Below, in pieces: positions 1,632 to 41,265 of a stretch of DNA of 64,000 bases. Below the pieces are notes generated by a model. It saw nothing but the letters and a program-made list of their open reading frames with translations. It was not told the origin of the DNA and did not search any database. A program made the translations under genes and the position numbers. The DNA comes from Octopus sinensis (Eukaryota): positions 187,426,001 to 187,490,000 of the forward strand of contig NC_042998.1 in the NCBI RefSeq assembly GCF_006345805.1. The letters run 5' to 3'. Positions within the stretch are counted from its first letter, which is position 1, and each line of letters opens with the position of its first letter.

Positions 1632-1708
1632 CGTGATATAGTTGGCATTGATATAATCTGTGAAAGGGTCATCATCAATTACATCTAGTTGCACTCGGCT
1701 ATGGTCAA
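1632..1708 (-). CDS. RPTP-like gene, PTP motif 2-3 exon ((F)DHSRVQLDVIDDDPFTDYINANYIT); gene continues beyond window start
   Basis: DHSRV.L and DYINANY motifs; 77-nt exon, the conserved length for this RPTP exon; tttttcaag acceptor, gtaagt donor. Confidence 0.96.
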
Positions 1709-2734
1709 CTTGAAAAATGAATATAACATATATGAAACAACAAAGGGAGTACAGGGAGTGGTATAAATTTATAATCTCTAGGAACGTCTTTATTTTATGA
1801 CAGAAGGTCACTTGGGGTTTAAAGGATGAGTTTTGAATAAGCTAGAAACATATGTAAATTACTTCTAATAACAACTTAACTTCTAGATTTTCATATGTGT
1901 GTGCATGCATGTGTGTGTGCATGTGTGTGAGTGTGTGTGTGTAAATGTTTAGATGCCTACATCATCGTTTAACGTCCGCTCTCCATGCTAGCATGGGTTG
2001 GACGGTTCGACCGGGGATCTGGGAAGCCAGAAGGCTGCACCAGGCTCTGGTCTTATCTGGCAATGTTTCTACAGCTGGATGCCCTTCCTAACGCCAACCA
2101 CTCCGTGAGTGTAGTGGGTGCTTTTTACGTGCCACCTGCACTAGTGCCAGGCGAGGCTGGCATCGGCCACGGTCGGATTGGTGCTTTTTACGTGCCACCG
2201 ACACGGAAGCCAGTCGAGGCGGCGCTGGCATTGGCCACGATTCGGATAGTGCTTTTTACATCTAAGTACATACAGATATGTTTCTGTCAGAAACACAAAC
2301 AGTGATGGGAAAAATGTATTTAAAAACTTTATTAATATCAAACAATAATACTGATCTTTGTTTACAAAGCCATTTGAGGACTTTCTTAGAGGCAACAATT
2401 CAATCAAAAGTACTAAGTTTTACCTATTTTTGACCTAACTTTAACCTATGCTCCTATATGAATCTAATCCATTACATCTGTATCTATGTACATACTTGAA
2501 TCAACCCTAACAATGGCACAGGACAGTTGTGCAAAGAAGTGCTGATCTCTGACGATGGAGGGGATCCGTAGAAGAGATAGATCCAGGAAGACATGAGACA
2601 AGGTGGTCAAGCATGATCTTCCCTGACTACTTCAGTCATTTTTTTTTTGATAAATTGATAAATTTCTTATAAAGATTTTATCCTATTTTTAAATTTTTAA
2701 TTTAACCGGAATATTTTCAGTGCTGAATTATTCT

Positions 2735-2902
2735 GCAGGAGTGGCTGTGTGGTAAGTAGCTTACCTACCAACCACATGGTTCTGGGTTCAGTCCCACTGC
2801 ATGGCATTTTGAGCAAGTGTCTTCTGCTATAGCCTCGGGCCGACCAATGCCTTGTGAGTGGATTTGGTAGACGGAAACTGAAAGAAGCCTGTCGTATATA
2901 TG

Positions 2903-2951
<49 letters not shown>

Positions 2952-3150
2952 TTGTGTGTCTGTGTTTGTCCCCCTAGCATTGCTTGACAACCGATGCTGG
3001 CGTGTTTACGTCCCCGTCACTTAGCGGTTCGGCAAAAAAGACCGATAGAATAAGTACTGGGCTTACAAAAATAAGTCCTGGGGTCAAGTTGCTCGATTAA
3101 AGGCGGTGCTCCAGCATGGCCACAGTCATATGACTGAAACAAGTAAAAGA
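2735..3150 (+). mobile_element. Octopus-type tRNA-derived SINE, family A (internal TA/TG microsatellite)
   Basis: A/B-box-like head tggctgtgtggtaag...ggttcagtccc, conserved core, gactgaaacaagtaaaaga tail. Further copies at about 14145-14570, 15078-15490, 31125-31500(-), 37611-37995, 38870-39272(-), 39970-40378(-), 43347-43730, 56317-56730(-), 57068-57475(-). Confidence 0.9.
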
Positions 3151-3179
3151 AAAGAAAGGAAGAATAAAGATCTACGTAC

Positions 3180-3312
3180 ATGGTAACACATTCAAAAATC
3201 GATTCTTCTTTTTATTTTGAAGCTTTTGAGCTTCAATACAGGGTAGGAATGTATCATTTGAGGTCTGGTCAGATTCCTCAGTAAGAATAAATGGATTCAC
3301 TTTGCCTATAAT
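3180..3312 (-). CDS. RPTP-like gene, PTP motif-1 exon (IIGKVNPF...PCIEAQKLQNKKKNRFLNVLP)
   Basis: catttcag acceptor, gtacgt donor, 133 nt, phase 0 to 1; KNRF.NVLP pTyr-recognition loop motif. Confidence 0.93.
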
Positions 3313-3789: not shown

Positions 3790-4340
3790 AATTACTGTTT
3801 ATAGTGCTCAGGTGCACTTACACCTCATCGGAGGTGTATGTACAGTACATACAATTATGTACAAAAGTCAGGAAAGTGAACAGTGTATGAATTATGATAC
3901 ACATGTGTACATGCATATGGAGCAGGGGATATCAGGTGTAGTGTTGGTGAATTTTAGGAAACATGGAGGTTTTAAAGGATGCAATGTCTCTGCAACTAAT
4001 AACCGATGCAGATAGTTTGTTCCATTCTTTGACAACTCTGAGTGTGAAAAAATGTTTCCAAAAGTCATGGGAGCTGTGCTGCTTTCTGACTTTGTAGGCA
4101 TGCCCATGTGTGTTAGACACATGAAGCTCAAAAAGTTGCTCAAGGTGGTTGTTGGCACAATGGTTAATAATTTTGTGGGTGTTTGTAATCCATTTCCATC
4201 CCTACTCAACCTGCTGTAGCTTTTTGTATGTATAACATCATATATCATAGTAAAATCACCCAATTATTTCATTATAGATGTCTGTATTCTCCCAATCTTA
4301 CCAATCTCATCTTTTTATCTCTTCTGTTTATCAAAACTAT
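3790..4340 (-). mobile_element. CR1/L2-clade LINE 3' end, same family as 11433-11936
   Basis: ORF 3932..4120 HAYKVRKQHSSHDFWKHFFTLRV and the same 3' UTR (gtgcacctgagcac). Confidence 0.88.
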
Positions 4341-4484
4341 CTAAATTTCAGTTGGTTGATGAACTTTTAAACAAGATATTTTCCAATTTTTTTTTTCACT
4401 TTTGAGATACATGCCAAACATTTTTCTTATTCTCTTAACCTAAGAGATTAAATGAAAACAATCAAATGATTTAAAGTGGATTAC

Positions 4485-4545
4485 CTTATAATCTTGGATA
4501 AAAGTTTTTGAATCCATATGTAGAAAATTCTTGATTTTGTATGGT
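4485..4545 (-). CDS. RPTP-like gene, wedge-region exon ((R)PYKIKNFLHMDSKTFIQDYK)
   Basis: tttcctgcag acceptor, gtaa donor, 61 nt, phase 2 to 0; resembles the RPI.IKNF...DS...EF segment preceding R3-type PTP domains (from memory of PTP10D/PTPRB). Confidence 0.82.
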
Positions 4546-6068: not shown

Positions 6069-6128
6069 CTTTTATGTGATAGTGTTTTAAAAGGTCTTAA
6101 TTTCAAGAAATTAACGTTGCCAGTTGTC
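6069..6128 (-). CDS. RPTP-like gene, juxtamembrane exon (TTGNVNFLKLRPFKTLSHK)
   Basis: ataatctttcag acceptor, AG|gttggt donor, 60 nt, phase 2-2, bridges the TM exon and the next exon in frame. Confidence 0.7.
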
Positions 6129-7319
6129 CTGAAAGATTATCAAAACAAGATTGATATCATAATCATCATCATCGTTTAACGTCAAACAATTTTATGCACA
6201 GCTTAATTTAATGCTTGGTCAATGGAAACTTTGGAAGTTCTTCCTCATGATGCTTATCAGAATAATATTTTGTTAATGCTATTTAATTTTCTTTCAATTA
6301 TGATTATAATTTCAGTTGATTAAAATTATTTGAGGTTCACCATATCAGGAATGATAGCAGACATTTAACAACACATCATTCATACAAAAGGCAGCCTTGG
6401 AATATTTTTCCAATGTCAATCTTTTAATACAATACTTTAATTCTGAAAATGTTTTCCAAGAAGATAGGAATTAAGTATGATGCTTAATGACATAATGCAA
6501 TATAATATATTTTATATTTAAATATGATTTATTTTTAATGAGAATAAGGTATATGATATCATAAATACAAAAATCCAGTTATAATAGATAATATATAATG
6601 TAATACTTAAATGCACAGAAAATACTTCAGTTTTCAGCAACTACAAACTCTTTACAAAGCTCAAATGAAATACAATACAGAAATACTATAATGCTCCAAC
6701 TCAGAAATGGTGCTCTACTAGACATGCAGACTCCTTAGACCACATTCACAATAGAACTACCTCACTGATTGGCATGGAGCTACTATCTCTTTTCTCTACT
6801 TTTGGTATCACCACTTCTGTGGCTTCTGCTCCTCAGAGCTGGCTGATTTTGTACCAACCTCATTCATCTCTCTCTCTCTCCTCTTCTCATAACCCACATT
6901 GTGTTTACTCTTCCCATACCCTACAATAAATTCTTTTCTCAGGCCTTCCAGCTCAGAACATTTGATTCCCATATGTTCCTTCTTTGCCCATGTTTTCATG
7001 CAGCTATCAACTTACAACAGTTCAAAAGGCATATTAACTGTGTCAATCTCACCAAACTATTTTTAAATTTAAAAATATGTTTTAAATTCACACCAACGAC
7101 TTGGTTACGAAGTTTATTAATAAAAAAACTGAAATTCAAAATCAGGTTAGAAGTATGCATATAACTACATAGTTTTCAGCAAAAGAAGGCCATAACAGTG
7201 TTAAACGAAATGTTTTATGGAATGCTACATATATATATATATATATATAATATATATATATATTTCCATATATATGTATGTACATATATATATATATATA
7301 TATGATATATGTATGTATA

Positions 7320-7374
<55 letters not shown>

Positions 7375-7391
7375 TATATATATATTATATA

Positions 7392-7424
<33 letters not shown>

Positions 7425-7442
7425 GCATATATATATGTATGC

Positions 7443-7484
<42 letters not shown>

Positions 7485-7552: not shown

Positions 7553-9597
7553 CATCATCATCATCATTTAACATTCGTTTTCCATGCTAGCATGGGTTGG
7601 ACAGTTCAACTGGGGTCTGGAAAGCCAGGAGACTGCACCAGGCTCCAGTCTGATCTGGTAGTGTTTCTACAGCTGGATGCCCTTTCTAATGCCAACCACT
7701 CCGTGTGTAGTGGGTGCTTTTTACGTGCCACCAGCACAGGGGCCAGGGGAGGCTGGCAACAGCCACAAACAATTGATGCTTTTTACGTGCCACCGGCATG
7801 GAGGCCAATCAAGGCAGCACTGGCATCGGCCATGTTCAGATGGTGCTTTTTATGTGCCACTGGCACAACTACAATTTCCATTTGATTTTCATTTTGATGT
7901 TGATGTTCTTGACTCAATAGGACTCCTCAAGCACAGCAGGTCACCCCATGATCCAAGGTACTTTTGAATGGGCTGGAGCTGGTTATGCAAAACTGGTGTA
8001 GGATACAGCCATGAACTCACATTATTTGTCGGGTCTTTGCAGCCACAGCATATCTCCAGAGGTCTCGGTCTTTCGTCATTGCCTCTGTGAGGCCCAACAT
8101 TTGAAGGTCATGCTTCACCACCTCATCCCATTTCTTCCTGGGTCCACCTCTACCCCAGATTCCTTAAACTGTTTGGGAGTGGCACTTCTTCACACATCTC
8201 TCCTCATCCATCCATAGTACACAACCATACCAGTGCAAACATCTCTCTTGCATGCCACATCCAATGCTTCTTATGTCCAACATTTCTCTCAGGGAGCTTA
8301 CACTCTGTCGTGTGTGCACACTGACATTACACATCCAGCAGATCATGCTAGCTTCATTTCTTTTGGGCCTATGCATTCCTCCACAGACACGGACCATATT
8401 TCACTGCTGTGAAGCATGGCAGTTCGCACACATGCATCATACAATCTACCTTTCACTCTGAGCGAGAGACCCTTTATCACCAGTAAGGGCAGAAGCTTTC
8501 TAAACTTTTCCCAGGCTATTCTTATTCTAGTGGTAACACTCTCAGAGCATCCACCCCCAACTACTAACTTGGTTACCTAGGTAGCGGAAGCTATCAACTA
8601 CTTTGAGTTTCTCCCCCTGGAGTGTGATGGAATCTGTTTTCTGAGCATCAGTGGTTCTATTGCCCCTGTGCATCTGCCGCACACGAAAGCTATCTTCCCG
8701 GTTAATCTTCCTTTGACGTTGCTGCACCTCTTATGTGTCCATAGCTTACACTGGGTACATTTTATGGAGTTTCTACTTACACCTTTTCTACAGATAGAGC
8801 AGGGCCACCTACCTGAGTGGGTGTGTGATGAGTTCGCCTTCCTACTTGCTAGAACTTTGGTCTTTTCTACATTAACTCTAAGGCCTTTTGATTCTAAACC
8901 TTGCTTCCACATCTGAAATTTATTCTCTAGTTCTAGTAGTGATTCTGCTATGAGGGCCAGGTCATCAGCATAGTGGAGCTCACAGGGGAAACCCATCTGG
9001 AATTCCTCTATAATTGCCTGGAGAACTATGATGAATAAAAAGGGACTGAGGGCTGATCCTTGGTGGACCCTACTTCTACCTGGAATACTTCACTATACTC
9101 ATTTCCAATCCTAACCTTACTAATGGCCTCTCTGCATAGGGCCTGTACAGCCCTTATTAGCCATTCGTCAATCCCCAGTTTCCGCATCGCCCACCAGATA
9201 AGGGATCGGGGGACCCTGTCAAAGGCTTTCTCCAAGTCCACAAAAGCTAAGTAGAGGGTTTTATCTTTAGCTAGGCATTTCTCCTGCAGTTGTCAAACCA
9301 GGAATATAGCATCAGTGGTGCTTCTACTTGGCACAAAACTGAACTGCATCACATCTAAGCAGACTCTTTCCCTAATGAGATGGGCTATAACCCTCTCTGT
9401 GATCTTCATTACCTTTTCCAGCAGTTTGATACTTCTGTAGTTATTTCTATCTAGAGTATCACCTTTACCCTTGTAGCAGTTGACTATGGTGCAGCTATGC
9501 CAATCATTGGGTACGACTCCATCATGAACTACCTGGTTTACAATGCGGGCGACTAGGCCATAGCCCACACCACCAAATATTTTAAGCATTCCTGATG
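7553..9597 (-). mobile_element. 5'-truncated RTE-clade LINE with repeat-containing 3' UTR and (CAT)n tail
   Basis: RT remnants DLEKAFDRVPR, LHYADDL, GLRVNVEKTK; C-terminal CxxC/CxxC and RLRWYGHV-like motifs. Confidence 0.92.
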
Positions 9598-9620
9598 GGA
9601 GCTTTCTGCTGGCATGCTAT

Positions 9621-10301: not shown

Positions 10302-10395
10302 TGTTTCAACTGACGGAGGAATAAATAAATGAAAACTAATATGACCAGAATGAGAATAGCAATGATAATTCCAAGCCACCAATAGGGAAAAACAA
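10302..10395 (-). CDS. RPTP-like gene, transmembrane exon (VFPYWWLGIIIAILILVILVFIYLFLRQLK)
   Basis: tatatttacag acceptor, gtaagt donor, 94 nt, phase 1 to 2, about 22 hydrophobic residues followed by a basic stop-transfer segment. Confidence 0.92.
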
Positions 10396-11315: not shown

Positions 11316-12272
11316 GAGTAGTCGTAGTTATTAAAGGTGTTGTGATTGCATATTGAGTTGATGTTTCTTCAGATGTGTTCATTGATCGTGTTTGTGTGTC
11401 AAACTGTGTAACTGGTCGATGCTGTTACATAACACTTGGAATTCGCATCATCAGTTTGGAATCCCTATCTTGCTCAGAACATTGACCTCCTGGAATCTGT
11501 CCAGAGACGTGCAACCAAACGCATACCCTCCATCAGACACCTACCATATTCTGAGCGCCTTGTTTCCCTGGGCATGGATTCACTGAAGCTCCGGCGTCTG
11601 GCGACGGACTTGGTAAACACCCACAAGGTTATCAACCACCTCACCAACAACAACACTGAACACCTTTTTGATCTCCATGTGTCTAACACACGTGGACATG
11701 CCTACAAAGTCAGAAAACAACACAGCTCCCATGACTTTCGGAAACATTTTTTCACGCTCAGAGTTGCTGAAGCATGGAATAAACTGCCTGCGTCAGTTGT
11801 TGACTGCCATGACACTGCATCCTTTAAGGCCCTCATGCTTTCCGAAATCCGCCAAAACTACACCTGATTATATATACACTTTAGATGAGTTGTAGTGCAC
11901 CTGAGCACTGTACACAATGTTTATTATTATATATAAGAAGTGTCTTCTCCAGTTGTGTTAATTAACATTGTATTCCGAGATGCACTGAATGGAGTTGTTA
12001 GTTCAGAATCATTGAGTTTTGTTCCATTCTCAAGTGCGGCAAGTAATGCTGAAGCATAAGATACAGTTGATGATATTAAATTTCCTTGTGCATTAAATGG
12101 TTGCGCATTTGCAGGTATATCTGTTGCTCGTGATACTTCTGCTATATTCCTTTTTACCCTGATTTCCTTTATATCTGGCATTGCCTCTATTTGGCCTGCT
12201 TTTGAGTCTGTCATGAAATCATTGTTTTTACTAATGTGATGATTTGGTGGGAAAGGAAAAGATGCTGGCTGA
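11316..12272 (-). pseudogene. Disrupted duplicate of the stalk exon (pseudo-exon)
   Basis: Aligns to 37420-36960. Lacks the native acceptor (fused to intron sequence at 12272), carries an approximately 500-bp antisense LINE insertion (stop at 11929-11927) and a 14-bp frameshift deletion near 11412; donor gtaagg retained. Confidence 0.85.
11433..11936 (+). mobile_element. 5'-truncated CR1/L2-clade LINE 3' end inserted in the stalk pseudo-exon
   Basis: ORF 11436..11867 (LESVQRRATK, LRRL..DL, NTRGH, FFTLRV..AWNKLP); (tta)n tail; possible TSD acataa/atataa. Confidence 0.92.
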
Positions 12273-13030
12273 AACGTAAAGCTGATCTTGGGAATATTTC
12301 AATTCAGAACGTAAAGATATGCAACTAAATATCAAAGGCTGATGTGCTGCCACTCTACCAATGCACTACTATAATACAATAGTGTAGCTAGCGTGTCTGC
12401 CATCCGGGGTGGCCCTTCAGTCTGCCACACCTGGGCTGCCACAAAAAGTACATATTGCCTAAAGCAGACCCAAAAATGGCACCACACCCATAAAAGTACT
12501 GCACAGGGCAGACAACCCCTCTGTTCCCCTCTAGCTACACTAGTGCTCTAATAATAGTTAAAATTATGCTACACATACTGTAATGTATACTGAAACACTA
12601 TCATCTTTTTAATATACAGTATGATACACCATCTTAACCACCATCATCACCATTGTAGGTAGTGGCATCATAATTGTTGTTCTTTTCACAGCTTTGCAAG
12701 CAGTTTGATCAGTGGCATTCACTCACCTTCCTCCCACTCTTACCATCCTCCTACTCTCACATTTCTCCCACTCTCACCTTCCTCCCAACAAACATTAATG
12801 CACTTTCATCTTCCTAAGAGAACTTGAAGAATTAAATTTTTTGGTTAAAATATGAAAAACAACCTTCAGTCCTCAGTTATTCCAATCTAAACCCATTTTA
12901 TCATCTCCTTCACAAACACATTGAATGTATTACTCGACAAGTCAACAATACAGATTGATTAGCAAGAAATAGGAACCGAATTTCACACAAATTACCTCAT
13001 AGTCTCATAATGTGGTATATGTACATTATT
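12270..13030. repeat. Segmental duplicate of intron 26538-27298
   Basis: Collinear alignment; about 18 differences in the first 348 nt (hand count, about 95% identity). Confidence 0.93.
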
Positions 13031-13197
13031 CCTGAAAAGAAGGCAGGCTTGTCATGGTTAGAATACCATTGATCACTAGTTTGTTGAATCAGGGTTGGCC
13101 TCAAGTTAAACAACTATATTGCACTATATGGCTGTCCTTACAAAAGCATACTTGATGAACACATGGACATTGATTAAGAGCTCAACTTTTTACTTAC

Positions 13198-13326
13198 TTT
13201 TTACACAGATGTTTTCACTTTGCTTGTAATTGTCAGAGCAAGTACATCTCTTTGTTTCAGTGGAACAATAGGCATTACGAGCCTTACACTGATCCCCTTC
13301 TTCACATTTTTCACCAAATTTTTTCT
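13198..13326 (-). CDS. RPTP-like gene, six-Cys module 4 (KKFGEKCEEGDQCKARNAYCSTETKRCTCSDNYKQSENICVK)
   Basis: tatatttcag acceptor, gtaagt donor, 129 nt, phase 1-1, C-x5-C-x6-C-x6-C-x-C-x10-C. Confidence 0.88.
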
Positions 13327-15652: not shown

Positions 15653-15775
15653 TGTCTACACATTTTCCGTGTTTCCAAAAATAGACCTCAAAACAATCAC
15701 ATCTGTGTTGCTCATTACAGTGGGCCCTTTTATCAAGACACTCTTCCACGGTACAGTTTTTACCATAGGCTAGCT
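15653..15775 (-). CDS. RPTP-like gene, six-Cys module 3 (LAYGKNCTVEECLDKRAHCNEQHRCDCFEVYFWKHGKCVD)
   Basis: ctcttcacag acceptor, gtaagt donor, 123 nt, phase 1-1, C-x4-C-x6-C-x5-C-x-C-x10-C. Confidence 0.88.
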
Positions 15776-20647: not shown

Positions 20648-21690
20648 CTATTTCTAAGAGTAATTGTAGTCCTTTCTGTAGTTCAATGTCAATGTTCCGT
20701 TGTTTTTAACTTACTTTTTTCACACTTAGTTCCAAGACGAAAATATTTATCTTCACAGACACACTTTTGAGAGCTGCAAATGGCAAATTCATTTATGCAG
20801 GATGTATTTGTTTCACAATTCTCATTAAGTGCCAATTCTGCAATGAAACACATTAATTATAAAAATTAAACTGTGTACACCAACTTATAATAATTATTAT
20901 ATTAAAATTTATGGAACTCAACAACAGAAATAATGCATTTCTGAATTGTTAGATAATGCTATTAGATTTTCTCTTATGATAATATATTATTGTTATTATA
21001 TTTATTATTCATAATTTTAGGAAGATATCAAAAGATTTCTTTCTTTAAAAATGAATTAGGTACATTTTGGGAGAACATGCATCAAAGTTTCAAGTTTAAC
21101 AAGAATGTTTATGATCAAAATGTGTTGGAGGGTAACAAAACAAATTGAAAATATAAAGAAAAATTACACTGGAAAACACTCAAGAAAGTGTAACGGTTTG
21201 TTGTTAAGGTGTTGGTTGCCAGTATGCAAGATGGAAGAGAACAGTGATAGTGGTTGTAAAGAAATATTTATTTACCGTTACTTTAATATCTACCATACCA
21301 CAACAGGTAGGCTAGTGTAATAGTATAACACAGTTTGTAAAGCATGCAAGGTAAAAAGAGTTAATTTTGGCCTGTATATGAGTGTACACAAAGTAGTATA
21401 TATATAGAGATATGGTGATGTTGCAGAGAAAAGAAAGGGAGCTAATGAAAATGAGAGAGTGTGGATGAGACACTTTCTACATTGTTGTCACTCTCTGAAG
21501 TTATCTCAGTAGAGACAGTATTTTGTTTGAGCTGGTCAGCCGCCTCTCTGTCAGTCGCTCTCACTAACTGCTTTGGCTTACAGAGGGAGTTCTTGTTTTT
21601 CTAACTATCCAAAACCAGCCAGAAGGATAGACATATTGTTGAGAACAATAGATTTCGTTGGCGGTCTGTTATGTCTATTCTAGCTTTTGG
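20648..21690. repeat. Segmental duplicate of 28735-29780 including the Cys module exon
   Basis: Collinear near-identical alignment over about 1.05 kb; 5 differences in about 220 nt of intron next to the exon (hand count). Confidence 0.95.
20715..20837 (-). CDS. RPTP-like gene, six-Cys module 2, recent duplicate of module 1 (LALNENCETNTSCINEFAICSSQKCVCEDKYFRLGTKCEK)
   Basis: Same splice sites as module 1, 123 nt, phase 1-1, all six Cys kept; lies within the duplicated block 20648-21690. Confidence 0.88.
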
Positions 21691-27499: not shown

Positions 27500-28710
27500 A
27501 AATGGCTGCACCAGGCCCCAATCTTGATCTGGAAGAGTTTCTACAGCTGGATGCCCTTCCTAATGCCAACCACTCTGAGATTGTAAGTGGGTGCTTTTTA
27601 CGTGCCACCAGCACGGGACCCAGTCAGGTGGTACTGGCAACGACCTCGCTCAAATCTTTTTACACATGCCACCAGCACAGGTGCCAGTAAGGCGATGCTG
27701 GTAACGATCACACTCAAATGGTGCCCTTTTATGTGCCACTGGTACGGAAGCCGGTTAGCCGCTCTGTCAACGATCACCCTTATATGGTGCTCTTTGCACC
27801 TCGCTAGCACGGATGCCAGTCATCGAATTTGATTTTGATTTTGATTTCGATTTCACTTGCCTCAACAGGTCTTCGCAAGCAGAGTTTAGTGACCAAAGAA
27901 GGAAAAGGTATGCATAAGCGGGCTGGTGACGCTCCTGGCATAAGCCACAGATTATGGTCTCATTTGGCTTGCCGCGTCTTCTCAAGCACAGCATATTTCC
28001 AAAAGTCTCAGTCGCTAGTCATTTCCTTGGTGAGGCCTAAAGTTCGAAGGTCGTACTTCACCACTTCATCCCAGGTCTACTGCTTCCACAGGTTCCCTCA
28101 ACAGCTAGGGTGTGGCACTTTTTCACACAGCTATCCTCATCCATTCTCACCACGTGACCATACCAGCGCAGTCGTCTCTCTTGCACATCACATCTAATGC
28201 TTCTTAGGTCCAACTTTTCTCTCGAGGTACTTACACTCTGTCTAGTATGCACACTGACATTACACATCCATCAGATCATACTGGCTTCATTCCTTGCGAG
28301 CTTACACATGACCTCAGCAGTCACAGCCCATGTTTCACTGCCATGTAGCATGGCTGTTCATACACAAGTGTCATACAGTCTACCTTTTACTCTGAGTGAG
28401 AGGCCCTTTGTCACCAGCAGAGGTAAGAGCTCTCTGAACTTTGCCCAAGATATTCTTATTCTAGCAGTTACACTTTCAGTGCACCCGCCTCCGCTACTGA
28501 CTTGGTCCCTAAGTAACGGAAGCTATCAACTACTTCTAGTTTTTCTCCCTGGAATGTGGCAGAAGTTCGTCTCTGCACATTTTCAGTGTTTATCGCTCCC
28601 GAGCATCTGCCACATACAAAAACTATCTTCTCAATTAGCCTTCCCTTGATATTACTGCACCTCTTATGTGTCCATAGCTTACACTGGGTACATCTTATAG
28701 AGTTTCTACC
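27500..28710 (-). mobile_element. RTE-clade LINE 3' portion
   Basis: ORF 28058..28267 ERRLRWYGHVVRM plus 3' UTR repeat units. Confidence 0.88.
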
Positions 28711-28799
28711 TACACCTCTATTTTTTTTTTTATTATTTCTAAGAGTAATTGTAATCCTTTTTATAGTTCAATGTCAAAGTTCTGTTGTTTTTAACTTAC

Positions 28800-28922
28800 T
28801 TTTTTTACACTTAGATTCATCTTCAAAATAATCATCTTGACAGACACACTTTTGATTTCTGCAAATGGCAAATTCATTTATGCAGGATGTATCTCTTTCA
28901 CAATTCTCATTAAGTGCCGATT
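28800..28922 (-). CDS. RPTP-like gene, six-Cys EB/EGF-like module 1 (SALNENCERDTSCINEFAICRNQKCVCQDDYFEDESKCKK)
   Basis: gtgtttcattgcag acceptor, gtaagt donor, 123 nt, phase 1-1, spacing C-x5-C-x6-C-x4-C-x-C-x10-C. Confidence 0.88.
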
Positions 28923-29789
28923 CTGCAATGAAACACATTAATTATAAAAATTAAACTGTGTACACCAACTTATAATAATTATTATATTCAAATTTATGGA
29001 ACTCAACAACAGAAATAATGCATTTCTGAATTGTTAGATAATGCTATTAGATTTTCTCTTATGATGATATATTATTGTTATTATATTTATTATTCATTAT
29101 TTTAGGAAGATATCAAGAGATTTTTTTCTTTAAAAATGAATTAGGTACATTTTGGAGAACATGCATCAAAGTTTCAAGTTTAACAAGAATGTTCATGATC
29201 AAAATGTGTTGGTGGTTAACAAAACAAACTGAAAACACAAAGAAAAATTACACTGGAAAACACTCAAGAAAGTGTAACGGTTTGTTGTTAAGGTGTTGGT
29301 TGCCAGTATGCAAGATGGAAGAGAACAGTGATAGTGGTTGTAAAGAAATATTTATTTACCGTTACTTTAATATATACCATACCACAACAGGTAGGCTAGT
29401 GTAATAGTATAACACAGTTTGTAAAGCATGCAAGGTAAAAAGAGTTAATTTTGGCCTGTATATGAGTGTACACAAAGTAGTATATATATAGAGATATGGT
29501 GATGTTGCAGAGAAAAGAAAGGGAGCTAATGAAAATGAGAGAGTGTCGGATGAGACAGCTTCTACATTGGTAAACTCCATTGTTGTCACTCTCTGAAGTT
29601 ATCTCAGTAGAGACAGTATTTTGTTTGAGCTGGTCAGCCGCCTCTCTGTCAGTCGCTCTCACTAACTGCTTTGGCTTACGGAGTTCTTGTTTTTATAACT
29701 ATCCAAAACTAGCCAGAAGGATAGAGATATTGTTGAGAACAATAGATTCCGCTGGCGGTCTGTTATCTCTATTCTAGCCTTTTGATCCC

Positions 29790-30410: not shown

Positions 30411-33400
30411 CAAGGGGACAATCTGATTAACTATACTGGTGACTAGGCCATATCCTACTCTACAAGTTTACTAAGTTTATTTACTCTGTCAGTATGAATC
30501 TTAAAACTCTGCAAAATCTTATACTTCTTACTTACTAGCACTTGACTAGGTTCACATTTGTACCACTTATCAGTATGGTCATTTTCTAGCTTTCTACATA
30601 ACTTCCAATGGATTATTCTCCCTAAGTTGTCATACTTTTTTGTATTCCTTTTGTGCTAGCATACTACATTCATTAACTATATAAGTTACACTTTCGTCCT
30701 TTAATTTATGTAACCTACATAGAGAATTTACCTGATTTTTATCTATCTTAGCTTTTATTCAGTTATTCCTCTATGCCTGATCTTATGTTCCAATTAACAA
30801 ACTTTCTGTCTCTCTTTTTAGCTTTCCTTTCTACCACCACAACCATGTTTCACTATTATTATTTTCTGCAACTATTTTTAGAAATCTACCATGCAAAGCT
30901 TTCTCTTATCAGTCAGATAATCTTGCTTCTTTTTTATGGCTTTTACTGACATTTGGTTTTTTGGTTTCCTTATCTCCTACTGTTACACTAAAATTTTGTC
31001 ACTATTACCTACATAGGAAGCTATATCCACTCTAGCTAACTCCACACAGTCTTCTACTGATATTAAACCTCTACCACCTTTCTTTCTAGGTAAATAGAAT
31101 CTTGCTACTCCTCTCTTTTACTCTTTTACTTGTTTCAGTCATTTGACTGCGGCCATACTGGAGCACCGCCTTTAGTCGAGCAAATCGACCCCAGAACTTA
31201 TTCTTTGTAAGCCCAGTACTTATTCTATCGGTCTATTTTGCCGAACCGATAAGTGACGGGGACGTAAACACACCAGTATCGGTTGTCAAGCAATGCTAGG
31301 GGGACAAACACAAACACACACACACATATATACATATATATGACAGGCTTCTTTCAGTTTCCGTCTACCAAATCCACTCACAAGGCATTGGTTGGCCCAA
31401 GGCTCTAGCAGAAGACACTTGCCCAAGATGCCACGCAGTGGCATGAACTCGGAACCATGTGGCTGGTTAGCAAGCTACTTACCACACAGCCACTCCTGCG
31501 CCTCCATTCATATTGAATTCATTCTTCTGTCTAGATTTGCTAATTCAGATCTTGTCCAATCTACAAAAGCTGCTGAATATCTAAGTAAGGATGCTGAACC
31601 AAATATTTACAGCCTTCACCAGATTCGGACCATTTAGCTTTGACTTCATTAACTTCCTCACCCAACTTTCTCTTTCATTTCTATAGTTAGTATTCTGTCA
31701 GATTCTAATACTCCTTGATGCTTATAACTTACCCCTTTCAATGATTTTAATCTCTGGCCATCTAGTTTTTGAATGCTTTCACTACTGACTACCTTTACTT
31801 TTTTTATGACTAATATTGCACACTTATCTATGCCAAATTCCATGCTTATATCTTTGCTAAAGAGTCTTACAGTTTTTATTAAAGAATCTGTCTCCTTTTT
31901 ATTCTTACTAAAAAGCTTCAAATACTCCTTGTAGAGCAAATTGTTAATGTTTCCTTTACTATCTCTGAACTGATACCCAGCCTTTGCCTTTCTTAATACT
32001 AAATTGAGGGGTGGTTAAAGGTAACATAAATATCAAAGGAGACAATGAGTCTCCTTGGAAGATTACCTCTCTTGATATTAACTTTCCCTAAGGTTGTATT
32101 ACCTAAGTAAAGGTCTACTTTCCATTTTTTTTTTGTGTTATAGCTAACTAAATCTTTTATGTTATCTGTAATATTGAATATACTCAAACATTTGCTTATC
32201 CATGAACATGAAATCATGTCATAGGTGTTCTTATAATCTATCCATAATAAAATTTTTCTTTCTTGATTTCACTTCTTTTAGAACTGCTTTGTCTATGTAT
32301 AATAGATCATGCACTCCTCTAGCCTTCTTCCTGCAATCTTTCTGTTTTTTCTGGAAGTAAATTCTGTCTGTCAAGATGTTCAGAAATGCTTCATGAGAGC
32401 ATTCCTGTTAACACTTTGCTCACTAATGGTAAGCAAATTATTGGTCTATAATTACTAGCTATATTTCCCTTACTTTTGTCTTTTATAAGGAGTACTCTCT
32501 CCCTCCAGTCATCCAGATAGGTATGACTCCTCCATTCAAACAATCCTGAAGCTGTTCTCTCATTCTACCATATAAGTTTCTAAATATCTTTAACCAATAT
32601 CCTTGAACTAAATCTGGTCCAGTGCTCTTCCTTCCAATTCAGCATTCTTCCTAACATGTTATTCATTAAAGCACTAGTTAGTTTTAGATCTGTCCACTTC
32701 TCGCTAACCATTTCTTCCCTCACTTTCTTTAACCATGTTGCATCCTCATTATGATCAACTGGTTTATCTCAAATATCACTCCAGAACTTTCTAGTTTCTT
32801 CTACATTAGGTTCCTCATCCTCAGTAGTTTCTTCTACACTATTTACTTGGCAATAAAATTTCCTCTGGTTTGTCTCTAACAATCTATTCTGTTGATACTG
32901 ATCTATTCTTTTCTGATATCTGGAAAGCTTACTAGATACTGCTATGATACATTGTTTCAACTCTTCCACGACTATCCTAAACCCTTTCTCTTTAACTAAG
33001 TATGTTTTCTTAAGAGAAGATTTAAATCTTGTATTTCCCACCTTGTCCTGTTCCTAGGCTTCTATTCTACTCAGATCTTGGCTTAAAATATTCACTTTAT
33101 TTTGTAATTTCCTTGTCTGCACCTGCTCCTTCCTATTCTTTCCTCGTGGAATACCTAGTCTTCTAGTAACTACCACACCTGCTGCATAGCTCAATAAGTT
33201 AGAGTCATCTATATCTATAGTATCTACTTTCATAATAATATCAAGTAACTTCCTTTTATTAACACCTTTTAATTCTAGTAATCTTTTGCTTTCTTCTCAT
33301 TACTTCTTTCAACTCACCTAAAATCTTTAGTCACCGGAGTCAGTTTTCCCTTCCTGATTGGTAGGACTATTATTTTTTCTTGTAGGCTCTTCCTTGACTT

Positions 33401-35893: not shown

Positions 35894-35932
35894 CAATGTC
35901 ATCATGATCATTATTATTCATGGCGAAATCCC
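35894..35932 (-). CDS. Candidate 39-nt phase 1-1 mini-exon (DFAMNNNDHDDI) of the RPTP-like gene
   Basis: Acceptor attcatttcag, donor gtacgt (the same donor as the 3180 exon), frame-preserving between stalk and first Cys exon. No homology support. Confidence 0.35.
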
Positions 35933-36959: not shown

Positions 36960-37425
36960 TAGTAGTCGTAGTTATTAAAGGTGTTGTGGTTACATATGGA
37001 GTTGATGTTTCTTCAGATGTGTTCACTGATCGTGTTTGTGTGCCAAACTGTGTTACATTCTCAGTGTCATTGGTCGATGCTGTTACATAAGAAGCGTCTT
37101 CTCCAGTTGTGTTAATCAACATTGTATTCCGAGATGCACTGAATGGAGTTGTTAGTTCAGAATCATTGAGTTTTGTTACATTCTCAAGTGCGGGAAGTAC
37201 TGCTGAAGCATAAGTTGATGATGTTAAATTTCCTTGTGCATTTATTGGTGGCGCATTTGTAGATATATTTATTGCTTCTGATCCTTTTGGTTTACTCCTT
37301 TTTACCCTGATTTCCTTTAAATCTGACATTGCCTCTATTTGGCCTGCTTTTGATTCTGTCACGAAACCATTGCTTTTACTAATGTGATGATTTGGTGAGG
37401 AAGGAAAAGATGCTGGCTGACCATG
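36960..37425 (-). CDS. RPTP-like gene, Ser/Thr-rich stalk/pro-region exon (155 codons) with RVKR proprotein-convertase site at 37308-37297
   Basis: 24-T tract + ag acceptor, 466 nt open (phase 0 to 1), donor gtaagg; HGQPASFPSSPNHH...EIRVKRSKPKG...PLITTTT; 8 N-x-S/T sequons; overlaps ORF 36922..37362. Confidence 0.8.
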
Positions 37426-38035
37426 CTAAAAAAAAAAAAAAAAAAAAAAAAGCAAATGGAAATTAATATAAGAAAACATATGAAAAAAATTTTAGTTTTG
37501 GTCATTCATTTTTAATGCAAGAGAAAAAAAATCATCTTGCCAGAAGTCCATTCTTTTTCTTTTCTGTTTGTGAAATGGAAGGAATGAAATATATAATTTT
37601 TATGCATCTATGCAGGAGTGGCTGTGTGGTAAGTAGCTTGCTAACCAGCCACATAGTTCCGGGTTCAGTCCCACTGCGTGGCATCTTGGGCAAGTGTCTT
37701 CTGCTATAGCCCCGGGCCGACCAATGCCTTGTGAGTGGATTTGGTGGACGGAGGCTGAAAGAAGCCTGTTGTATATATGTGTATGTGTGTGTGTTTGTCC
37801 CCCTAGCATTGCTTGGCAACCGATGCTGGTGTGTTTACGTCCCCGTCACTTAGCGGTTCGGCAAAAGAGACCGATAGAATAAGTACTGGGCTTACAAAGA
37901 ATAAGTCCTGGGGTCGATTTGCTCGACTAAAGGTGATGCTCCAGCATGGTCACAGTCAAATGACTGAAACAAGTAAAAGAGTAAAAGAGTAAAGAGTATT
38001 TAGTTCAATTTTCTTTTCAACTACAGAGTCCTTAA

Positions 38036-38432
38036 TCTATGATATAAATTGGATATGGGCGATCGTCTTATTCTTTCTTGTCTTGAGGTTCACAGCTAAA
38101 CGGCTGGGTGGATTTGCATGAAAATGTGGAGACAAGTGCATAGATTGGAATGCAGTTTGTATTTTTTTCCTAACCCCCATACTGAAAAAAATCGATTAAA
38201 ACTTTTTCTAATGGAATTTCCCTCTTTCTTCTGCCATTAAAACAACTAGTTGCTTAGGAGCTGTTTTCTGACGGGGTGGGGTCAAGAAATTTTCATATAG
38301 CTGGAGACTCCAATCGAAACAGGGGACCCGAAATGATAAGGTTGACAAATGCTGTTATAGATTATGCTTGACCGAAAACGATCACAGCCACATCATCCAA
38401 ACAGACCGGGCGAAACCGGGCTTAGCTGCTAG
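38036..38432 (+). mobile_element. Non-autonomous Helitron
   Basis: 5' A|TC(tatgatataaa), 3' ccgggcgaaaccggg hairpin-like motif then CTAG|T; inserted in an AT dinucleotide with no TSD. Confidence 0.8.
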
Positions 38433-39077
38433 TATTCATATATAACCTCTATTCTTATCTTGCTGGATCCCTTTAGTTCAGAGTAACCAGGGATCTAGAG
38501 CTCAGTTAATTACTCTCCGTTACATTAAGGAGGGAGCAGGGGAGATAGAAAAGGTGTATATTGAAAGCATTTCACTTGGAGGAAGACAATACAATTGGGT
38601 GACAAAATATTGATAAGAAGTCATCCAAATTACATTTAATAATTTTTCGTTGATATATTTTTTAAAAATTTGTTTTTCTTTCTATTTTTCCACATTAACA
38701 AAGGGTGGGTAAGACAGAAAGTTAAGAAAAAATATGTCAAAATTCATGGAGCATGTATTTAATGTTGGGTGCTGTTCTTACATTGTCAGTTAACCTAAAA
38801 GGTCACTTAGAAAATGATTGGTCAACAAACTTGTTATTGATCATTGTATTCCATGTCACTCTCTTTTCTCTTTTCTCTTTTACTTGTTTCAGTCATTTGA
38901 CTGCGGCCATGCTGGAGCACCGCCTTTAATCGAGCAACTCGACCCCGGGACTTATTCTTTGTAAGCCCAGTACTTATTCTATCGGTCTCTTTTTTGCCGA
39001 ACCGCTAAGTGACGGGGACGTAAACACACCAGCATCGGTTGTCAAGCGATGCTAGGGGGACAAACACAGACACACAA

Positions 39078-39112
<35 letters not shown>

Positions 39113-41127
39113 CGACAGGCTTCTTTCAGTTTCCGTCTACCAAATCCACTCACAAAGCATTGGTCGACCCGGGGCTATAGCAGAAGACACTTGCCCAAGA
39201 TGCCACGCAGTGGGACTGAACCCGGAACCATGTGGTTGGTTAGCAAGCTACTTACCACACAGCCACTCCTGCGCCTATAATGTAACTCTGTTACATTTAT
39301 TCTCCAAAATCATCATCATCATCATCGTTTAACGTCCGCTTTCCATGCTAGCATGGGTTGGACGGTTCAACTGGGGTCTGGGAAGCCAGGAGGCTGCACC
39401 AGGCCCAGTCTGATCTGGCAGTGTTTCTACAGCTGGATGCCCTTCCTAACACCAAAATAACAAAACAAAAATGTTTTGCTACAGTTGCTTACTTTATACT
39501 ATGTGCATCTTCATTTTAGAAACAGTACACTGCATCCATGCGAGTTGTATGGTCAGCGATATGTAGGGTATCCTACCATAAAAAAAAAACTACCTCAGAA
39601 AACCATCTAATCCGTGCCTATTTGAAAGAGTGGACATACAATGCTTATGAGGAGGGTGACAGCTATGCTTCACCAGTATGAGATTTTTGTCTATCCAAAA
39701 TTGCTCTTTCTGTAAAAATTTTTGTAGTAAATTGTCATTTCTGAATCCATTTACTTGAGTGTGAAATGAGAAGTAGCATAGTTGAATTTCTTTAAGAGTC
39801 AGTAATTATATGTCAACTTAGGATTCTTGAATTAGTGGTTCAACACAACTAAATAACTGTGGGAAACACTGGTGTACAAGAATTATATTTTGAAAACTCT
39901 CTTCATCCTCTCTATCTTACTGTCTATCTTCATCCTCTAATATTACCGTCCTACAAGAATCCAGACCTCTTTACTCTTTTACTTGTTTCAGTCATTTGAC
40001 TATGGCCATGCTGGAGCACCGCCTTTAGTCGAGCAAATCGACCCCAGGACTTATTCTTTGTAAGCCTAGTACTTATTCTATTGGTCTCTTTTGCCGAACC
40101 ACTAAGTTACGGGGACATAAACACACCAGCATTGGTCGTCAAGCGATGTTGGGGGGACAAACACAGACGCACAAACATATATACACACACACATACACTT
40201 ATATATATACATATATACAACGGCTTCTTTCAGTTTCTGTCTACCAAATCCACTCACAAGGCTTTGGTTGGCCCGAGGCTATAGAAGAAGACACTTGCCC
40301 AAGGTGTCACGCAGTAGGACTGAACCCGGAACCATGTGGTTGGTAAGCAAGCTACTTACCACACAGCCACTCCTATGCCTATTTTTTTTTTGTTTAATGA
40401 CTGAATCAGATGAGGGAGAGCAGGATCATTGCCACCTTGCAGAACCTTCATTGGAAACATGTCTCAAACTCTTACATTACCTTCATCACCAAAACCATCA
40501 CCATTATCATCATTTTTGCATTTACCTTTGTATGCTGACATGGGTTAGATAGGTCATTACAAACCAAATTAGTTCTTTATAAATGCTACTACCCTCTCAG
40601 ATAGGTTAGGGACATCATGCTCATATAACTCACTTTTAATATGTTTTCTATTGCTAGATGTCCTTCCTATCTTCAACCACTTTATAAAGTATACTGAGTG
40701 TATTTTGTAGTGGCAAGGCAGGTAAGTTGCCCCTGCTTTATATTGTGTCTGTTTGCTTGCTTAACCACTTAACTGAAGATACAGGGTGGACTTTATCATG
40801 GCACCAGCACTAGAGATGTTGTATTGTCCCTGACAAGACTCATGGGCCCCCTCTACCCTATGTTGACTCCGTTCATTTATTGTTCACCAGCATTAAATGA
40901 ATTGTTCAGATGAAGCAAGGAGTGCAGAGGCCCAAAATAAGAGGTTGATAGTTTAATTGTTCAAAATTTACCTAACCATGCTGTTTCTATAAAGAATGGG
41001 AAATACAGGGGAATATAAATTATGTTAATTAGTTTTTAATTAATAAGGGGAGATGATTCTTCAAGCATCCAGTTTCACTAGCATCTCTCAAGATGGGATA
41101 GAACTAAAAAATACCATGTTAACTTAC

Positions 41128-41181
41128 CTTTACAAGGAATGAGACCACCCAAAGAATGGTGTATACTGGAAAAGTCTTCAT
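41128..41181 (-). CDS. RPTP-like gene, first coding exon: signal peptide MKTFPVYTILWVVSFLVK (exon 41184-41128, ATG at 41181)
   Basis: Acceptor tttttttttacag, 3 nt UTR then ATG, 18 codons with a basic n-region and hydrophobic core, consensus donor AAG|gtaagt in phase 0 matching the next exon. An acceptor implies a non-coding exon further upstream, which I could not locate. Confidence 0.8.
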
Positions 41182-41265
41182 TGACTGTAAAAAAAAATAG
41201 CAGCAATCTTATAGACAGACAGACAGAAAGAGACAAACATTAATATGTATGTACATACATACACA

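What the first reader, a model, noticed from the sequence alone, without database searches (positions are those of the whole stretch)
1632..41184. Hidden receptor-type PTP with an unusual ectodomain: signal / furin-site mucin-like stalk / 4 six-Cys EB-like modules / TM / R3-like PTP
Seen: eleven minus-strand exons with GT-AG boundaries splice into one stop-free 1443-nt (481-codon) frame with matching phases. Only two of these exons are evident from the ORF track. Established: the cytoplasmic part (RP.KIKNF wedge, KNRF, DHSRV, DYINANY, 77-nt exon) resembles R3-subfamily RPTPs such as PTP10D/PTPRB, whose ectodomains are FN3 arrays. Inference: I found no FN3/Ig exon; a glycosylated stalk and tandem phase 1-1 Cys modules appear to replace them, suggesting an exon-shuffled, lineage-specific signalling receptor. 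I cannot tell whether it has been described.
Basis: partly seen in the sequence, partly recalled or inferred. Interest (0 to 1): 0.85.

Follow-up and report, generated by a model that had tools for sequence, protein, structure and literature searches.

The report
Octopus receptor phosphatase with EB-module ectodomain
The eleven spliced exons are real and encode the front part of an Octopus sinensis receptor tyrosine phosphatase with four small cysteine-rich EB modules outside the cell, but the gene is already annotated in RefSeq, so what remains of interest is its unusual, fast-evolving ectodomain.

Summary
The 11 minus-strand exons (1443 nt) translate to 481 residues identical to the first 481 of RefSeq XP_036356456.1, Octopus sinensis "receptor-type tyrosine-protein phosphatase C isoform X1" (815 aa). 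Window bases 1-51181 match that species' chromosome at 100%. The gene is therefore not hidden.

The same EB-plus-phosphatase architecture is annotated in O. bimaculoides and O. vulgaris. It also sits on one transcript contig from an unidentified organism. The Argonauta ortholog has no EB exons.

The architecture is: signal peptide, Ser/Thr-rich stalk with 8 N-glycosylation sequons, four six-Cys EB modules (Pfam PF01683, one phase 1-1 exon each), a transmembrane helix, and a single phosphatase domain. That domain is closest to R3-type phosphatases (Ptp10D, PTPRB, molluscan FN3-bearing forms). There is no FN3 or Ig domain.

The furin motif RVKR is present only in O. sinensis and O. vulgaris.

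Additional findings:
- The ectodomain evolves with dN/dS about 1.7, against 0.18 for the catalytic domain.
- EB exon number varies from 3 to 5.
- EB1 is a cassette exon.
- Pseudo-exons and gene-conversion tracts are present.

I found no paper describing the gene. It is a database-known, uncharacterised variant of a known receptor class, of modest interest.

The parts
41128..41184 (-). First coding exon. The ATG is at 41181. It encodes MKTFPVYTILWVVSFLVK (signal peptide) and ends in phase 0. An AG acceptor at 41185-41186 implies an upstream 5'UTR exon.
   Evidence: Sequence read. Identical to RefSeq X1 residues 1-18. The N-terminus is homologous to the Argonauta protein MKTLPAYIM....
36960..37425 (-). 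Stalk exon, 466 nt, phase 0 to 1. It is Ser/Thr-rich (30%), carries 8 N-x-S/T sequons and holds RVKR at residues 58-61.
   Evidence: AlphaFold gives pLDDT of about 23 across this stretch, from a low-confidence model.
28800..28922 (-). EB module 1, 123 nt, phase 1-1. It is a cassette exon, skipped in RefSeq isoform X2. Isoform X3 uses an alternative donor 4 nt further downstream.
20715..20837 (-). EB module 2, 123 nt, phase 1-1.
   Evidence: Its 5' half and about 850 bp of upstream intron are homogenised with EB1.
15653..15775 (-). EB module 3, 123 nt, phase 1-1.
13198..13326 (-). EB module 4, 129 nt, phase 1-1.
   Evidence: This is the best Pfam EB stretch.
11317..12272 (-). Disrupted second copy of the stalk exon (pseudo-exon). 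Its two pieces are 12272-11930 and 11432-11317. They are split by an insertion of about 497 bp (11929-11433) flanked by a TTATRTA target-site duplication. There is also a 14-nt deletion. The copy is not part of the RefSeq mRNAs.
10302..10395 (-). Transmembrane exon, 94 nt, phase 1 to 2, encoding VFPYWWLGIIIAILILVILVFIYLFLRQLK.
   Evidence: The mean Kyte-Doolittle score of the best 20-residue window is 3.42. Homologous to the Argonauta TM. Confirmed.
6069..6128 (-). Juxtamembrane exon, 60 nt, phase 2-2, encoding QTTGNVNFLKLRPFKTLSHK(R).
   Evidence: Found by tblastn with the Argonauta protein. Sequence read. Confirmed.
4485..4545 (-). Wedge exon, 61 nt, phase 2 to 0, encoding (R)PYKIKNFLHMDSKTFIQDYK.
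3180..3312 (-). Exon at the start of the PTP domain, 133 nt, phase 0 to 1, ending in KNRFLNVLP.
1632..1708 (-). PTP exon of 77 nt, phase 1 to 0, encoding (F)DHSRVQLDVIDDDPFTDYINANYIT. This is the last coding exon inside the window.
   Evidence: The next exons map to L004 positions 52365-61959, which lie beyond the window start.

Best explanation
The window holds coding exons 1-11 of the Octopus sinensis gene that RefSeq calls 'receptor-type tyrosine-protein phosphatase C' (XP_036356456.1 to XP_036356461.1). The product is a type I membrane phosphatase. In order it has a signal peptide, a glycosylated and probably disordered Ser/Thr-rich stalk of about 155 aa, four tandem six-Cys EB (EGF-like) modules, one transmembrane helix, a juxtamembrane wedge, a single catalytic PTP domain and an acidic tail. 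The catalytic domain is complete (KNRF, WPD, VHCSAGVGRTG, Q-loop). The tail carries a YxN motif and ends in TSEL. Shown here: the exon structure, the domain composition, the R3-like affinity of the catalytic domain, conservation in three Octopus species, cassette use of EB1, and fast evolution of the ectodomain against a constrained catalytic domain. Inferred: it works like R3-type receptor phosphatases. The catalytic domain would remove phosphate from tyrosines on nearby membrane proteins such as receptor or Src-family kinases. The phosphorylated YxN tail would recruit SH2 adaptors. The ectodomain would set ligand specificity or physical size, and would be tuned by inclusion or skipping of EB exons and by exon gain, loss and conversion under diversifying selection.
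For: Identity: the 481-aa model equals RefSeq X1 residues 1-481, and the window matches CM016860.1 at 100%. Domains: EB scores 57.6 bits and Y_phosphatase 243.7 bits, with no FN3 or Ig hit. Same mRNA: RefSeq isoforms X1 and X2, and an intron-free 2288-nt transcript contig that encodes EB modules, a TM and a PTP domain in one ORF. Conservation: O. bimaculoides has the same exon order. R3 affinity, from PDB: among PDB chains holding one PTP domain, Ptp10D scores 232.8 bits, above PTPRB at 209, VE-PTP, PTPRO, PTPRJ and PTPRQ, and above PTPRA D1 at 190.5. R3 affinity, from BLASTP: in per-domain BLASTP, molluscan FN3-plus-single-PTP proteins score 232-262 bits, against 196-203 for PTPRA, PTPRC and PTPRE D1. 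Motifs: the catalytic motifs and YxN are present. Selection: between O. sinensis and O. bimaculoides, dN/dS is 1.75 for the stalk, 1.72 for EB1-4 and 0.18 for the PTP domain. In the ectodomain pN exceeds pS (Fisher p = 0.008). Synonymous rates are equal in ecto- and cytoplasmic parts. Stalk exon against its pseudo-copy gives pN 0.107 and pS 0.019.
Against: I could not inspect any transcript reads, expression data or biochemistry. The RefSeq models are predictions whose read support I could not see. The R3 assignment rests on score rankings, not a phylogeny, and the defining FN3 ectodomain is absent. The dN/dS values are pairwise Nei-Gojobori estimates on short regions. They are partly confounded by gene conversion between EB1 and EB2, so relaxed constraint cannot be fully separated from positive selection. 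AlphaFold gave a low-confidence model (mean pLDDT 38). Substrates and ligands are unknown.
Confidence: 0.9

Rival explanations
1. The gene is the cephalopod ortholog of vertebrate CD45 (PTPRC), as its RefSeq name says.
For: RefSeq names isoforms X1 and X2 'phosphatase C'. Like CD45, the protein has an N-terminal glycosylated mucin-like region, then a cysteine-rich region, alternative ectodomain exons and a fast-evolving ectodomain.
Against: It has one PTP domain, not the D1-D2 tandem. It has no FN3 domain and no CD45-specific Pfam families (PF12567, PF12453). CD45 D1 scores 197-198 bits, against 232-262 for R3-type molluscan proteins. RefSeq itself names isoform X3 'phosphatase 10D'. The resemblance to CD45 is one of design, not of descent.
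Confidence: 0.04
2. The EB and stalk exons belong to a separate gene nested in a long intron of a short-ectodomain phosphatase like the Argonauta one, and the joined model is an annotation artefact.
For: The Argonauta ortholog has no EB exons, and its stalk-to-TM intron is only about 600 bp. The first two homology searches found no protein matching the ectodomain.
Against: All four EB exons are phase 1-1 and fit between a phase-1 donor and a phase-1 acceptor. No start codon, stop codon or terminal exon for a separate gene is evident. Three species have joined models. A single intron-free transcript contig from another organism carries four colinear EB modules, a TM and a PTP domain. The EB-specific residues are maintained across species.
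Confidence: 0.03
3. The ectodomain has no specific ligand. It acts as a bulky glycosylated spacer whose length, set by the stalk and the number of EB modules, controls access of the phosphatase to close cell contacts. Its fast evolution would then reflect relaxed constraint or pathogen pressure rather than ligand co-evolution.
For: The stalk has 8 N-glycosylation sequons and is 30% Ser/Thr. Module number varies from 3 to 5 through splicing and exon duplication. In Argonauta the EB modules are absent and the stalk is instead expanded into tandem NYTTDQMRL repeats. This suggests that bulk matters more than fold. dN/dS is well above that of the cytoplasmic part.
Against: All six cysteines are kept in every module, and EB1- versus EB2-specific residues are retained across species despite conversion of the flanks. 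This points to selection on particular module surfaces. A dN/dS above 1 (p = 0.008) is more than relaxation alone predicts.
Confidence: 0.3

Closest known systems
R3-subtype receptor PTPs (Drosophila Ptp10D/Ptp4E; vertebrate PTPRB/VE-PTP, PTPRJ, PTPRO, PTPRH; molluscan FN3-bearing 'PTPRH-like'/'PTPRB-like' proteins)
   Same: A single cytoplasmic PTP domain with the best sequence matches to this group. A juxtamembrane segment that aligns to Ptp10D. A C-terminal YxN motif (motif as defined in PMC5336234). Ectodomain modules each encoded by a phase 1-1 exon, as FN3 exons are in R3 genes (PMC5336234).
   Different: The ectodomain has no FN3 repeats. It is a mucin-like stalk plus EB modules. The residue after YxN is Asp rather than a hydrophobic residue in Octopus (YTND, YSND). 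In Argonauta the motif is YENI.
Argonauta hians 'receptor-type tyrosine-protein phosphatase C-like' (709 aa, P0001)
   Same: It is the ortholog. The signal peptide, TM, juxtamembrane, wedge and PTP exons are homologous in the same order, with 79% identity in the PTP domain and the same ...VPLTQ.TSEL end.
   Different: There are no EB exons anywhere in its locus. The stalk is expanded into NYTTDQMRL tandem repeats, and the gene is compact at 19 kb.
CD45 / PTPRC
   Same: A similar design: a glycosylated mucin-like N-terminus, a Cys-rich region, alternatively included ectodomain exons, and a rapidly evolving ectodomain on a conserved phosphatase (CD45 properties are from general knowledge).
   Different: CD45 has two PTP domains and FN3 repeats, and its D1 is a weaker match.
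EB module proteins (Pfam PF01683; mostly nematode and insect secreted or membrane proteins)
   Same: Significant matches to the Pfam model in every Octopus ortholog, at 54-74 bits against a 24.3-bit cut-off. EB modules are regarded as EGF-like variants (bioRxiv 10.1101/2024.07.08.602367).
   Different: Each repeat unit here has six cysteines in about 41 residues and matches model positions 7/9-52. The full 52-position model is covered only by running into the preceding module. I found no report in the papers searched of EB modules fused to a phosphatase.

Membership tests
Classical receptor-type protein tyrosine phosphatase (Pfam PF00102) | PTP catalytic domain matched above the curated threshold | tested here: met
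   The window model covers profile positions 1-35 (29.8 bits against a 20.9 cut-off). The full RefSeq protein scores 243.7 bits over positions 1-232 of 234.
Classical receptor-type protein tyrosine phosphatase (Pfam PF00102) | Catalytic motifs: KNRY loop, WPD loop, HCX5R P-loop, Q-loop | tested here: met
   KNRF at 447, WPD at 583, VHCSAGVGRTG at 613 and QNQDQY at 662 in XP_036356456.1. Only KNRF lies inside the window.
Classical receptor-type protein tyrosine phosphatase (Pfam PF00102) | Signal peptide and a single transmembrane helix | tested here: met
   There is a hydrophobic N-terminus, MKTFPVYTILWVVSFLV. The TM window has a mean hydropathy of 3.42 and is homologous to the Argonauta TM. 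No dedicated signal-peptide predictor was available.
R3 subtype of receptor PTPs | Single cytoplasmic PTP domain | tested here: met
   One Y_phosphatase stretch in each ortholog.
R3 subtype of receptor PTPs | Ectodomain composed of fibronectin type III repeats (definition in PMC5336234) | tested here: not met
   No fn3 hit at E <= 0.01 in any of five family members. No FN3 or Ig exon in the window.
R3 subtype of receptor PTPs | Catalytic domain closest to R3 members | tested here: met
   Rankings only. Ptp10D scores 232.8, PTPRB 209, PTPRO 201 and PTPRJ 199, against PTPRA D1 at 190.5. Molluscan FN3-plus-PTP proteins score 232-262 bits, against 196-203 for PTPRA, PTPRC and PTPRE D1. No phylogeny was built.
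R3 subtype of receptor PTPs | C-terminal YxN phosphorylation motif | tested here: met
   YTND in O. sinensis and O. vulgaris, YSND in O. bimaculoides, YENI in Argonauta, and YENE/YENQ three times in P0023. Phosphorylation itself was not tested.
EB module (Pfam PF01683) | Match to the family model above the gathering score | tested here: met
   61.9 bits with 4 stretches on the window model. 57.6-73.8 bits on full orthologs, against a cut-off of 24.3.
EB module (Pfam PF01683) | Eight conserved cysteines per module (Pfam description, from memory) | tested here: inconclusive
   Each exon-encoded unit has six cysteines (C-x6-C-x6/7-C-x4/5-C-x-C-x10-C). The best single-module match covers profile positions 9-52.
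CD45 / PTPRC (the RefSeq name) | Tandem D1-D2 PTP domains and a CD45-type ectodomain (PF12567, PF12453, FN3) | tested here: not met
   There is a single PTP domain and none of these families, whereas vertebrate PTPRC hits in the same table carry them.

The most novel reading that the evidence does not exclude
This is a small cephalopod family of R3-derived receptor phosphatases whose FN3 ectodomain was replaced by shuffled phase 1-1 EB exons. Those exons are now diversifying under positive selection through exon duplication and loss, gene conversion and cassette splicing. That pattern would fit a recognition receptor engaged in an evolutionary arms race, for example immune (haemocyte) or gamete recognition, and would be an invertebrate counterpart of CD45 in design.
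Probability: 0.25. Interest if true: 0.55.

Novelty: new variant of a known kind. Interest (0 to 1): 0.3.

Why it matters
Receptor tyrosine phosphatases are classified largely by their ectodomains, and R3-type enzymes are defined by FN3-only ectodomains. This family shows an R3-like catalytic unit attached to a different, EGF-like module set built from symmetrical exons. It is a clear natural example of ectodomain replacement by exon shuffling. The ectodomain's dN/dS above 1, the variable module number between sister species, and the cassette exon make it a candidate fast-evolving recognition receptor in cephalopods, whose cell-surface signalling is poorly known. The practical weight is limited, because the gene model and its domains are already public and no function or expression data are available.

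Tried and rejected
1. My first ten-exon chain used acceptor 37355 and had no juxtamembrane exon. It gave a phase clash after the signal exon. An exhaustive search for a bridging exon found only SINE-derived candidates. The clash was resolved by the acceptor at 37425 and the 60-nt exon at 6128-6069, which was found with the Argonauta protein.

2. Two word-indexed homology searches, one with the spliced model and one with the ectodomain alone, missed the Octopus proteins. They surfaced only when I searched with the Argonauta hit.

I ran it with P0018 instead.

4. I rejected the nested-gene reading (see rivals).

5. I first read the EB1/EB2 difference (17 of 123 nt in the exon against about 3% in the flanks) as simple post-duplication positive selection. 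Comparison with O. bimaculoides shows that the differing residues are old EB1- versus EB2-specific ones. The pattern is therefore a conversion mosaic with the differences retained.

6. SENP8, which is fused upstream in one O. vulgaris model, is not in the window.

7. AlphaFold on a six-sequence alignment gave mean pLDDT 38. I judged it too poor for a fold search, so none was run.

8. Literature searches for the accession numbers, the locus name, 'octopus' plus the RefSeq protein name, and 'EB module' plus 'tyrosine phosphatase' found nothing on this gene.

9. The organism behind SRA run SRR9970004 could not be identified.

Full report
**What is in the window.** The window is AT-rich, repeat-laden animal DNA. 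On the minus strand I located open segments with PTP motifs (KNRF, DHSRV/DYINANY, RPYKIKNF), four six-cysteine segments, and a Ser/Thr-rich ORF.

I read the DNA at each site and chained AG/GT boundaries. My first attempt used a different acceptor for the stalk exon and lacked the 60-nt juxtamembrane exon. It failed on phase. The Argonauta homolog located the missing exon and the TM exon.

**Independent confirmation and identity.** Searching with the model found only an Argonauta hians protein (P0001) covering the TM-to-PTP part. The ectodomain alone found nothing. Searching with P0001 then recovered RefSeq models from three species, all carrying Pfam EB plus Y_phosphatase:
- Octopus bimaculoides (813 aa).
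- O. sinensis (774 aa).
- O. vulgaris (779 and 861 aa).

The cluster of the O. sinensis protein holds three isoforms:
- X1 (815 aa, XP_036356456.1 to XP_036356459.1).
- X2 (774 aa, lacking EB1).
- X3 (628 aa).

My 481-residue translation equals X1 residues 1-481 exactly. Window 1-51181 is the reverse complement of O. sinensis CM016860.1 at 100% identity. The remaining coding exons lie beyond the window start. The full protein they complete carries WPD, VHCSAGVGRTG, the Q-loop and an acidic tail with YTND, and ends in TSEL.

**Architecture.** Pfam finds EB modules (57.6-73.8 bits, cut-off 24.3) and one PTP domain in each Octopus protein, and nothing resembling FN3 or Ig.
- Each EB unit is one exon of 123-129 nt in phase 1-1 with six cysteines.
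- The stalk exon ends in phase 1 and the TM exon starts in phase 1, so any number of modules can be inserted or skipped without breaking the frame.
- RefSeq X2 skips EB1.
- O. vulgaris models carry three, four or five modules.
- The stalk has eight N-x-S/T sequons and is 30% Ser/Thr.
- RVKR occurs only in O. sinensis and O. vulgaris. It is absent from O. bimaculoides (TVKK), Argonauta and P0023. A conserved furin cleavage is therefore not supported.

**Which phosphatase subtype.** I scored the Argonauta catalytic region against PDB chains that hold a single PTP domain. R3 members lead: Ptp10D 232.8 bits, PTPRB 209, VE-PTP 205.8, PTPRO about 201 and PTPRJ 198.7. PTPRA D1 scores 190.5 and PTPRE D1 186.8. 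Two-domain chains score higher only because both domains match.

In per-domain BLASTP of the O. sinensis domain, the best matches are proteins with FN3 repeats and one PTP domain:
- A Logan protein: 262 bits.
- Mytilus 'PTPRH-like': 251 bits.
- Patella 'PTPRB': 232 bits.

PTPRA-, PTPRC- and PTPRE-type D1 domains score 196-203 bits. Together with the single domain and the C-terminal YxN, this supports an R3-like cytoplasmic part. The defining FN3 ectodomain (PMC5336234) is absent, so I do not file the gene as an R3 member. The RefSeq name 'phosphatase C' (CD45) is not supported: there is no second PTP domain and there are no CD45 ectodomain families.

**Distribution.** An exhaustive HMMER scan of 1.84 billion representatives found only three family representatives: the Octopus cluster, Argonauta, and P0023. 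Of 53 next-best shorter phosphatases, only P0023 has EB modules.

P0023 is encoded without introns on a 2288-nt contig from run SRR9970004, so it is a transcript. Its four EB modules are colinear with Octopus EB1-4 (30% identity). They are followed by a TM and a PTP domain in one ORF. The contig is 5'-truncated and shows a further EB-like module upstream. This is direct evidence that EB modules and the phosphatase share an mRNA, and that the design predates the genus.

The Argonauta gene (19 kb) has no six-Cys ORF anywhere. Its stalk-to-TM intron is about 600 bp, and its stalk is expanded into NYTTDQMRL repeats. O. bimaculoides has the same exon order as O. sinensis.

**Evolutionary dynamics.** Between O. 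sinensis and O. bimaculoides, protein identity is 94% in the PTP domain but 49-63% in the stalk and EB modules. Nei-Gojobori estimates are:

| Region | dN/dS |
|---|---|
| Stalk | 1.75 |
| EB1-4 | 1.72 |
| PTP domain | 0.18 |
| Whole cytoplasmic part | 0.34 |

Synonymous divergence is the same in both halves. In the ectodomain pN exceeds pS (Fisher p = 0.008).

Within the window, EB1 and EB2 share about 850 bp of upstream intron at about 97% identity. They differ at 17 of 123 exon positions, 16.5 of them non-synonymous. The differing residues (DDYFEDES against DKYFRLGT) are the ones that also distinguish EB1 from EB2 in O. bimaculoides. The pattern is therefore gene conversion with the module-specific residues retained, not neutral decay.

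O. bimaculoides also carries an EB4-like pseudo-exon cut by a SINE (L003 15596-15703).

**A missed feature: a second stalk exon.** Between EB4 and the TM exon lies a second copy of the stalk exon (12272-11930 and 11432-11317).
- It is interrupted by an insertion of about 497 bp with a TTATRTA target-site duplication, and it carries a 14-nt deletion.
- The insertion's + strand ORF (11436-11867) gave no Pfam hit. It is 81% identical to another copy at 3931-4184. I take it to be a transposable-element fragment from that repeat, the target-site duplication and the look of the ORF.
- The similarity between the two stalk copies stops within a few bases of the exon boundaries.
- Its translation is 94% identical to the functional O. 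vulgaris stalk but only 77% identical to O. sinensis's own stalk exon.
- Between the two copies, pN is 0.107 and pS is 0.019.
- The simplest reading is that the pseudo-copy preserves the older sequence, while the expressed exon has changed quickly in O. sinensis. I could not check the O. vulgaris DNA, because that locus was too long to fetch.

**How it most likely works.** Shown: the protein has the parts of an active receptor PTP. Inferred from R3 enzymes (PMC5336234 and general knowledge): it would dephosphorylate membrane-proximal phosphotyrosine substrates and recruit SH2 proteins through its YxN tail. Ectodomain composition would set either ligand specificity or steric size. I cannot discriminate between a specific ligand and a spacer role. 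The retained cysteines and module-specific residues favour specific surfaces. The Argonauta replacement of modules by mucin repeats favours bulk.

**Novelty and verdict.** I found no paper mentioning the gene or an EB-phosphatase fusion. However, the models and their Pfam domains have been public since the O. bimaculoides annotation. 'Hidden' is wrong, 'R3-like' is reasonable, 'furin site' is weak, and 'lineage-specific' needs qualifying. I rate it a variant of a known receptor class that is database-known and functionally uncharacterised. Its interest is modest and rests mainly on the ectodomain's selection signature and exon turnover.

**Limits.** I saw no read-level transcript evidence, built no phylogeny and had no signal-peptide or glycosylation predictor. 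The AlphaFold model was too poor to use.

Noticed in passing
window 11317-12272 (minus strand): A second, disrupted copy of the stalk exon lies between EB4 and the TM exon. It is split by an insertion of about 497 bp with a TTATRTA target-site duplication, and it has a 14-nt deletion. Its translation is closer to the O. vulgaris stalk (94%) than to O. sinensis's own expressed stalk exon (77%). The similarity ends almost exactly at the exon boundaries.
   Followed up: partly
window 20649-21689 and 28734-29784: A block of about 1 kb around EB2 and EB1 is 94% identical overall. The upstream intron is about 97% identical, but the 3' half of the exon differs at 14 of 60 positions. This looks like gene conversion that spared the module-specific residues.
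   Followed up: yes
window 12270-13033 and 26538-27301: A 764-bp direct repeat at 96% identity. One copy abuts the 5' edge of the stalk pseudo-exon, and the other lies in the EB1-EB2 intron. Its nature (transposable element, or the vehicle of the exon copy) is unexplained.
   Followed up: no
window 28796-28800 (minus strand): RefSeq isoform X3 is explained by a second GT donor 4 nt downstream of the EB1 donor (GTAA|GTTAAA). This shifts the frame, so the model starts from an internal out-of-frame ATG. It is probably a minor or nonsense-mediated-decay-prone splice form.
   Followed up: partly
window 8601-9589 (-), 27969-28717, 51878-53443 (+), 44601-44822 (+), 62954-63169 (+): Transposable-element remnants fill the introns and the upstream region. 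They include reverse-transcriptase fragments (Pfam RVT_1), a Helitron-like N-terminal domain (E = 2.7e-19) and a weak integrase-like match.
   Followed up: partly
window 2735-3153, 31112-31503, 37611-37994, 38858-39278, 39967-40382, 43334-43746, 56314-56725, 57063-57472: A SINE-like family of about 400 bp has at least eight copies in both orientations at 85-93% identity. It accounts for many of the spurious ORFs with the 'ARGYSRRHLPKMPRSGTEPGTMWLV' motif.
   Followed up: no
window 45039-45109 (-): ARAGORN calls a tRNA-Gln (TTG) sequence next to the Helitron-like fragment. I did not determine whether it is a gene or a repeat-derived copy.
   Followed up: no
window 59980-60803 and 59025-59396: Two tandem repeats with long units: 278 bp x 3.0 at 98% identity and 162 bp x 2.3 at 91% identity. 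Long (AT)n-rich microsatellites lie at 7229-7479, 56744-57068 and 57491-57963.
   Followed up: no
L003 15596-15703 (O. bimaculoides locus): An unannotated EB4-like pseudo-exon (CEKGDQCLDCNAFCSTKRTRCVCSGNY...) between EB1 and EB2 is truncated by a SINE. It is a sign of EB exon birth and death.
   Followed up: partly
outside the window (RefSeq proteins; alignment A2): All Octopus and Argonauta orthologs end in ...VPLTQ(V/K)TSEL, and P0023 ends in ...KLTKL. This may be a class I PDZ-binding C-terminus. One O. vulgaris model (1050 aa) is a read-through fusion with the upstream SENP8 gene.
   Followed up: no
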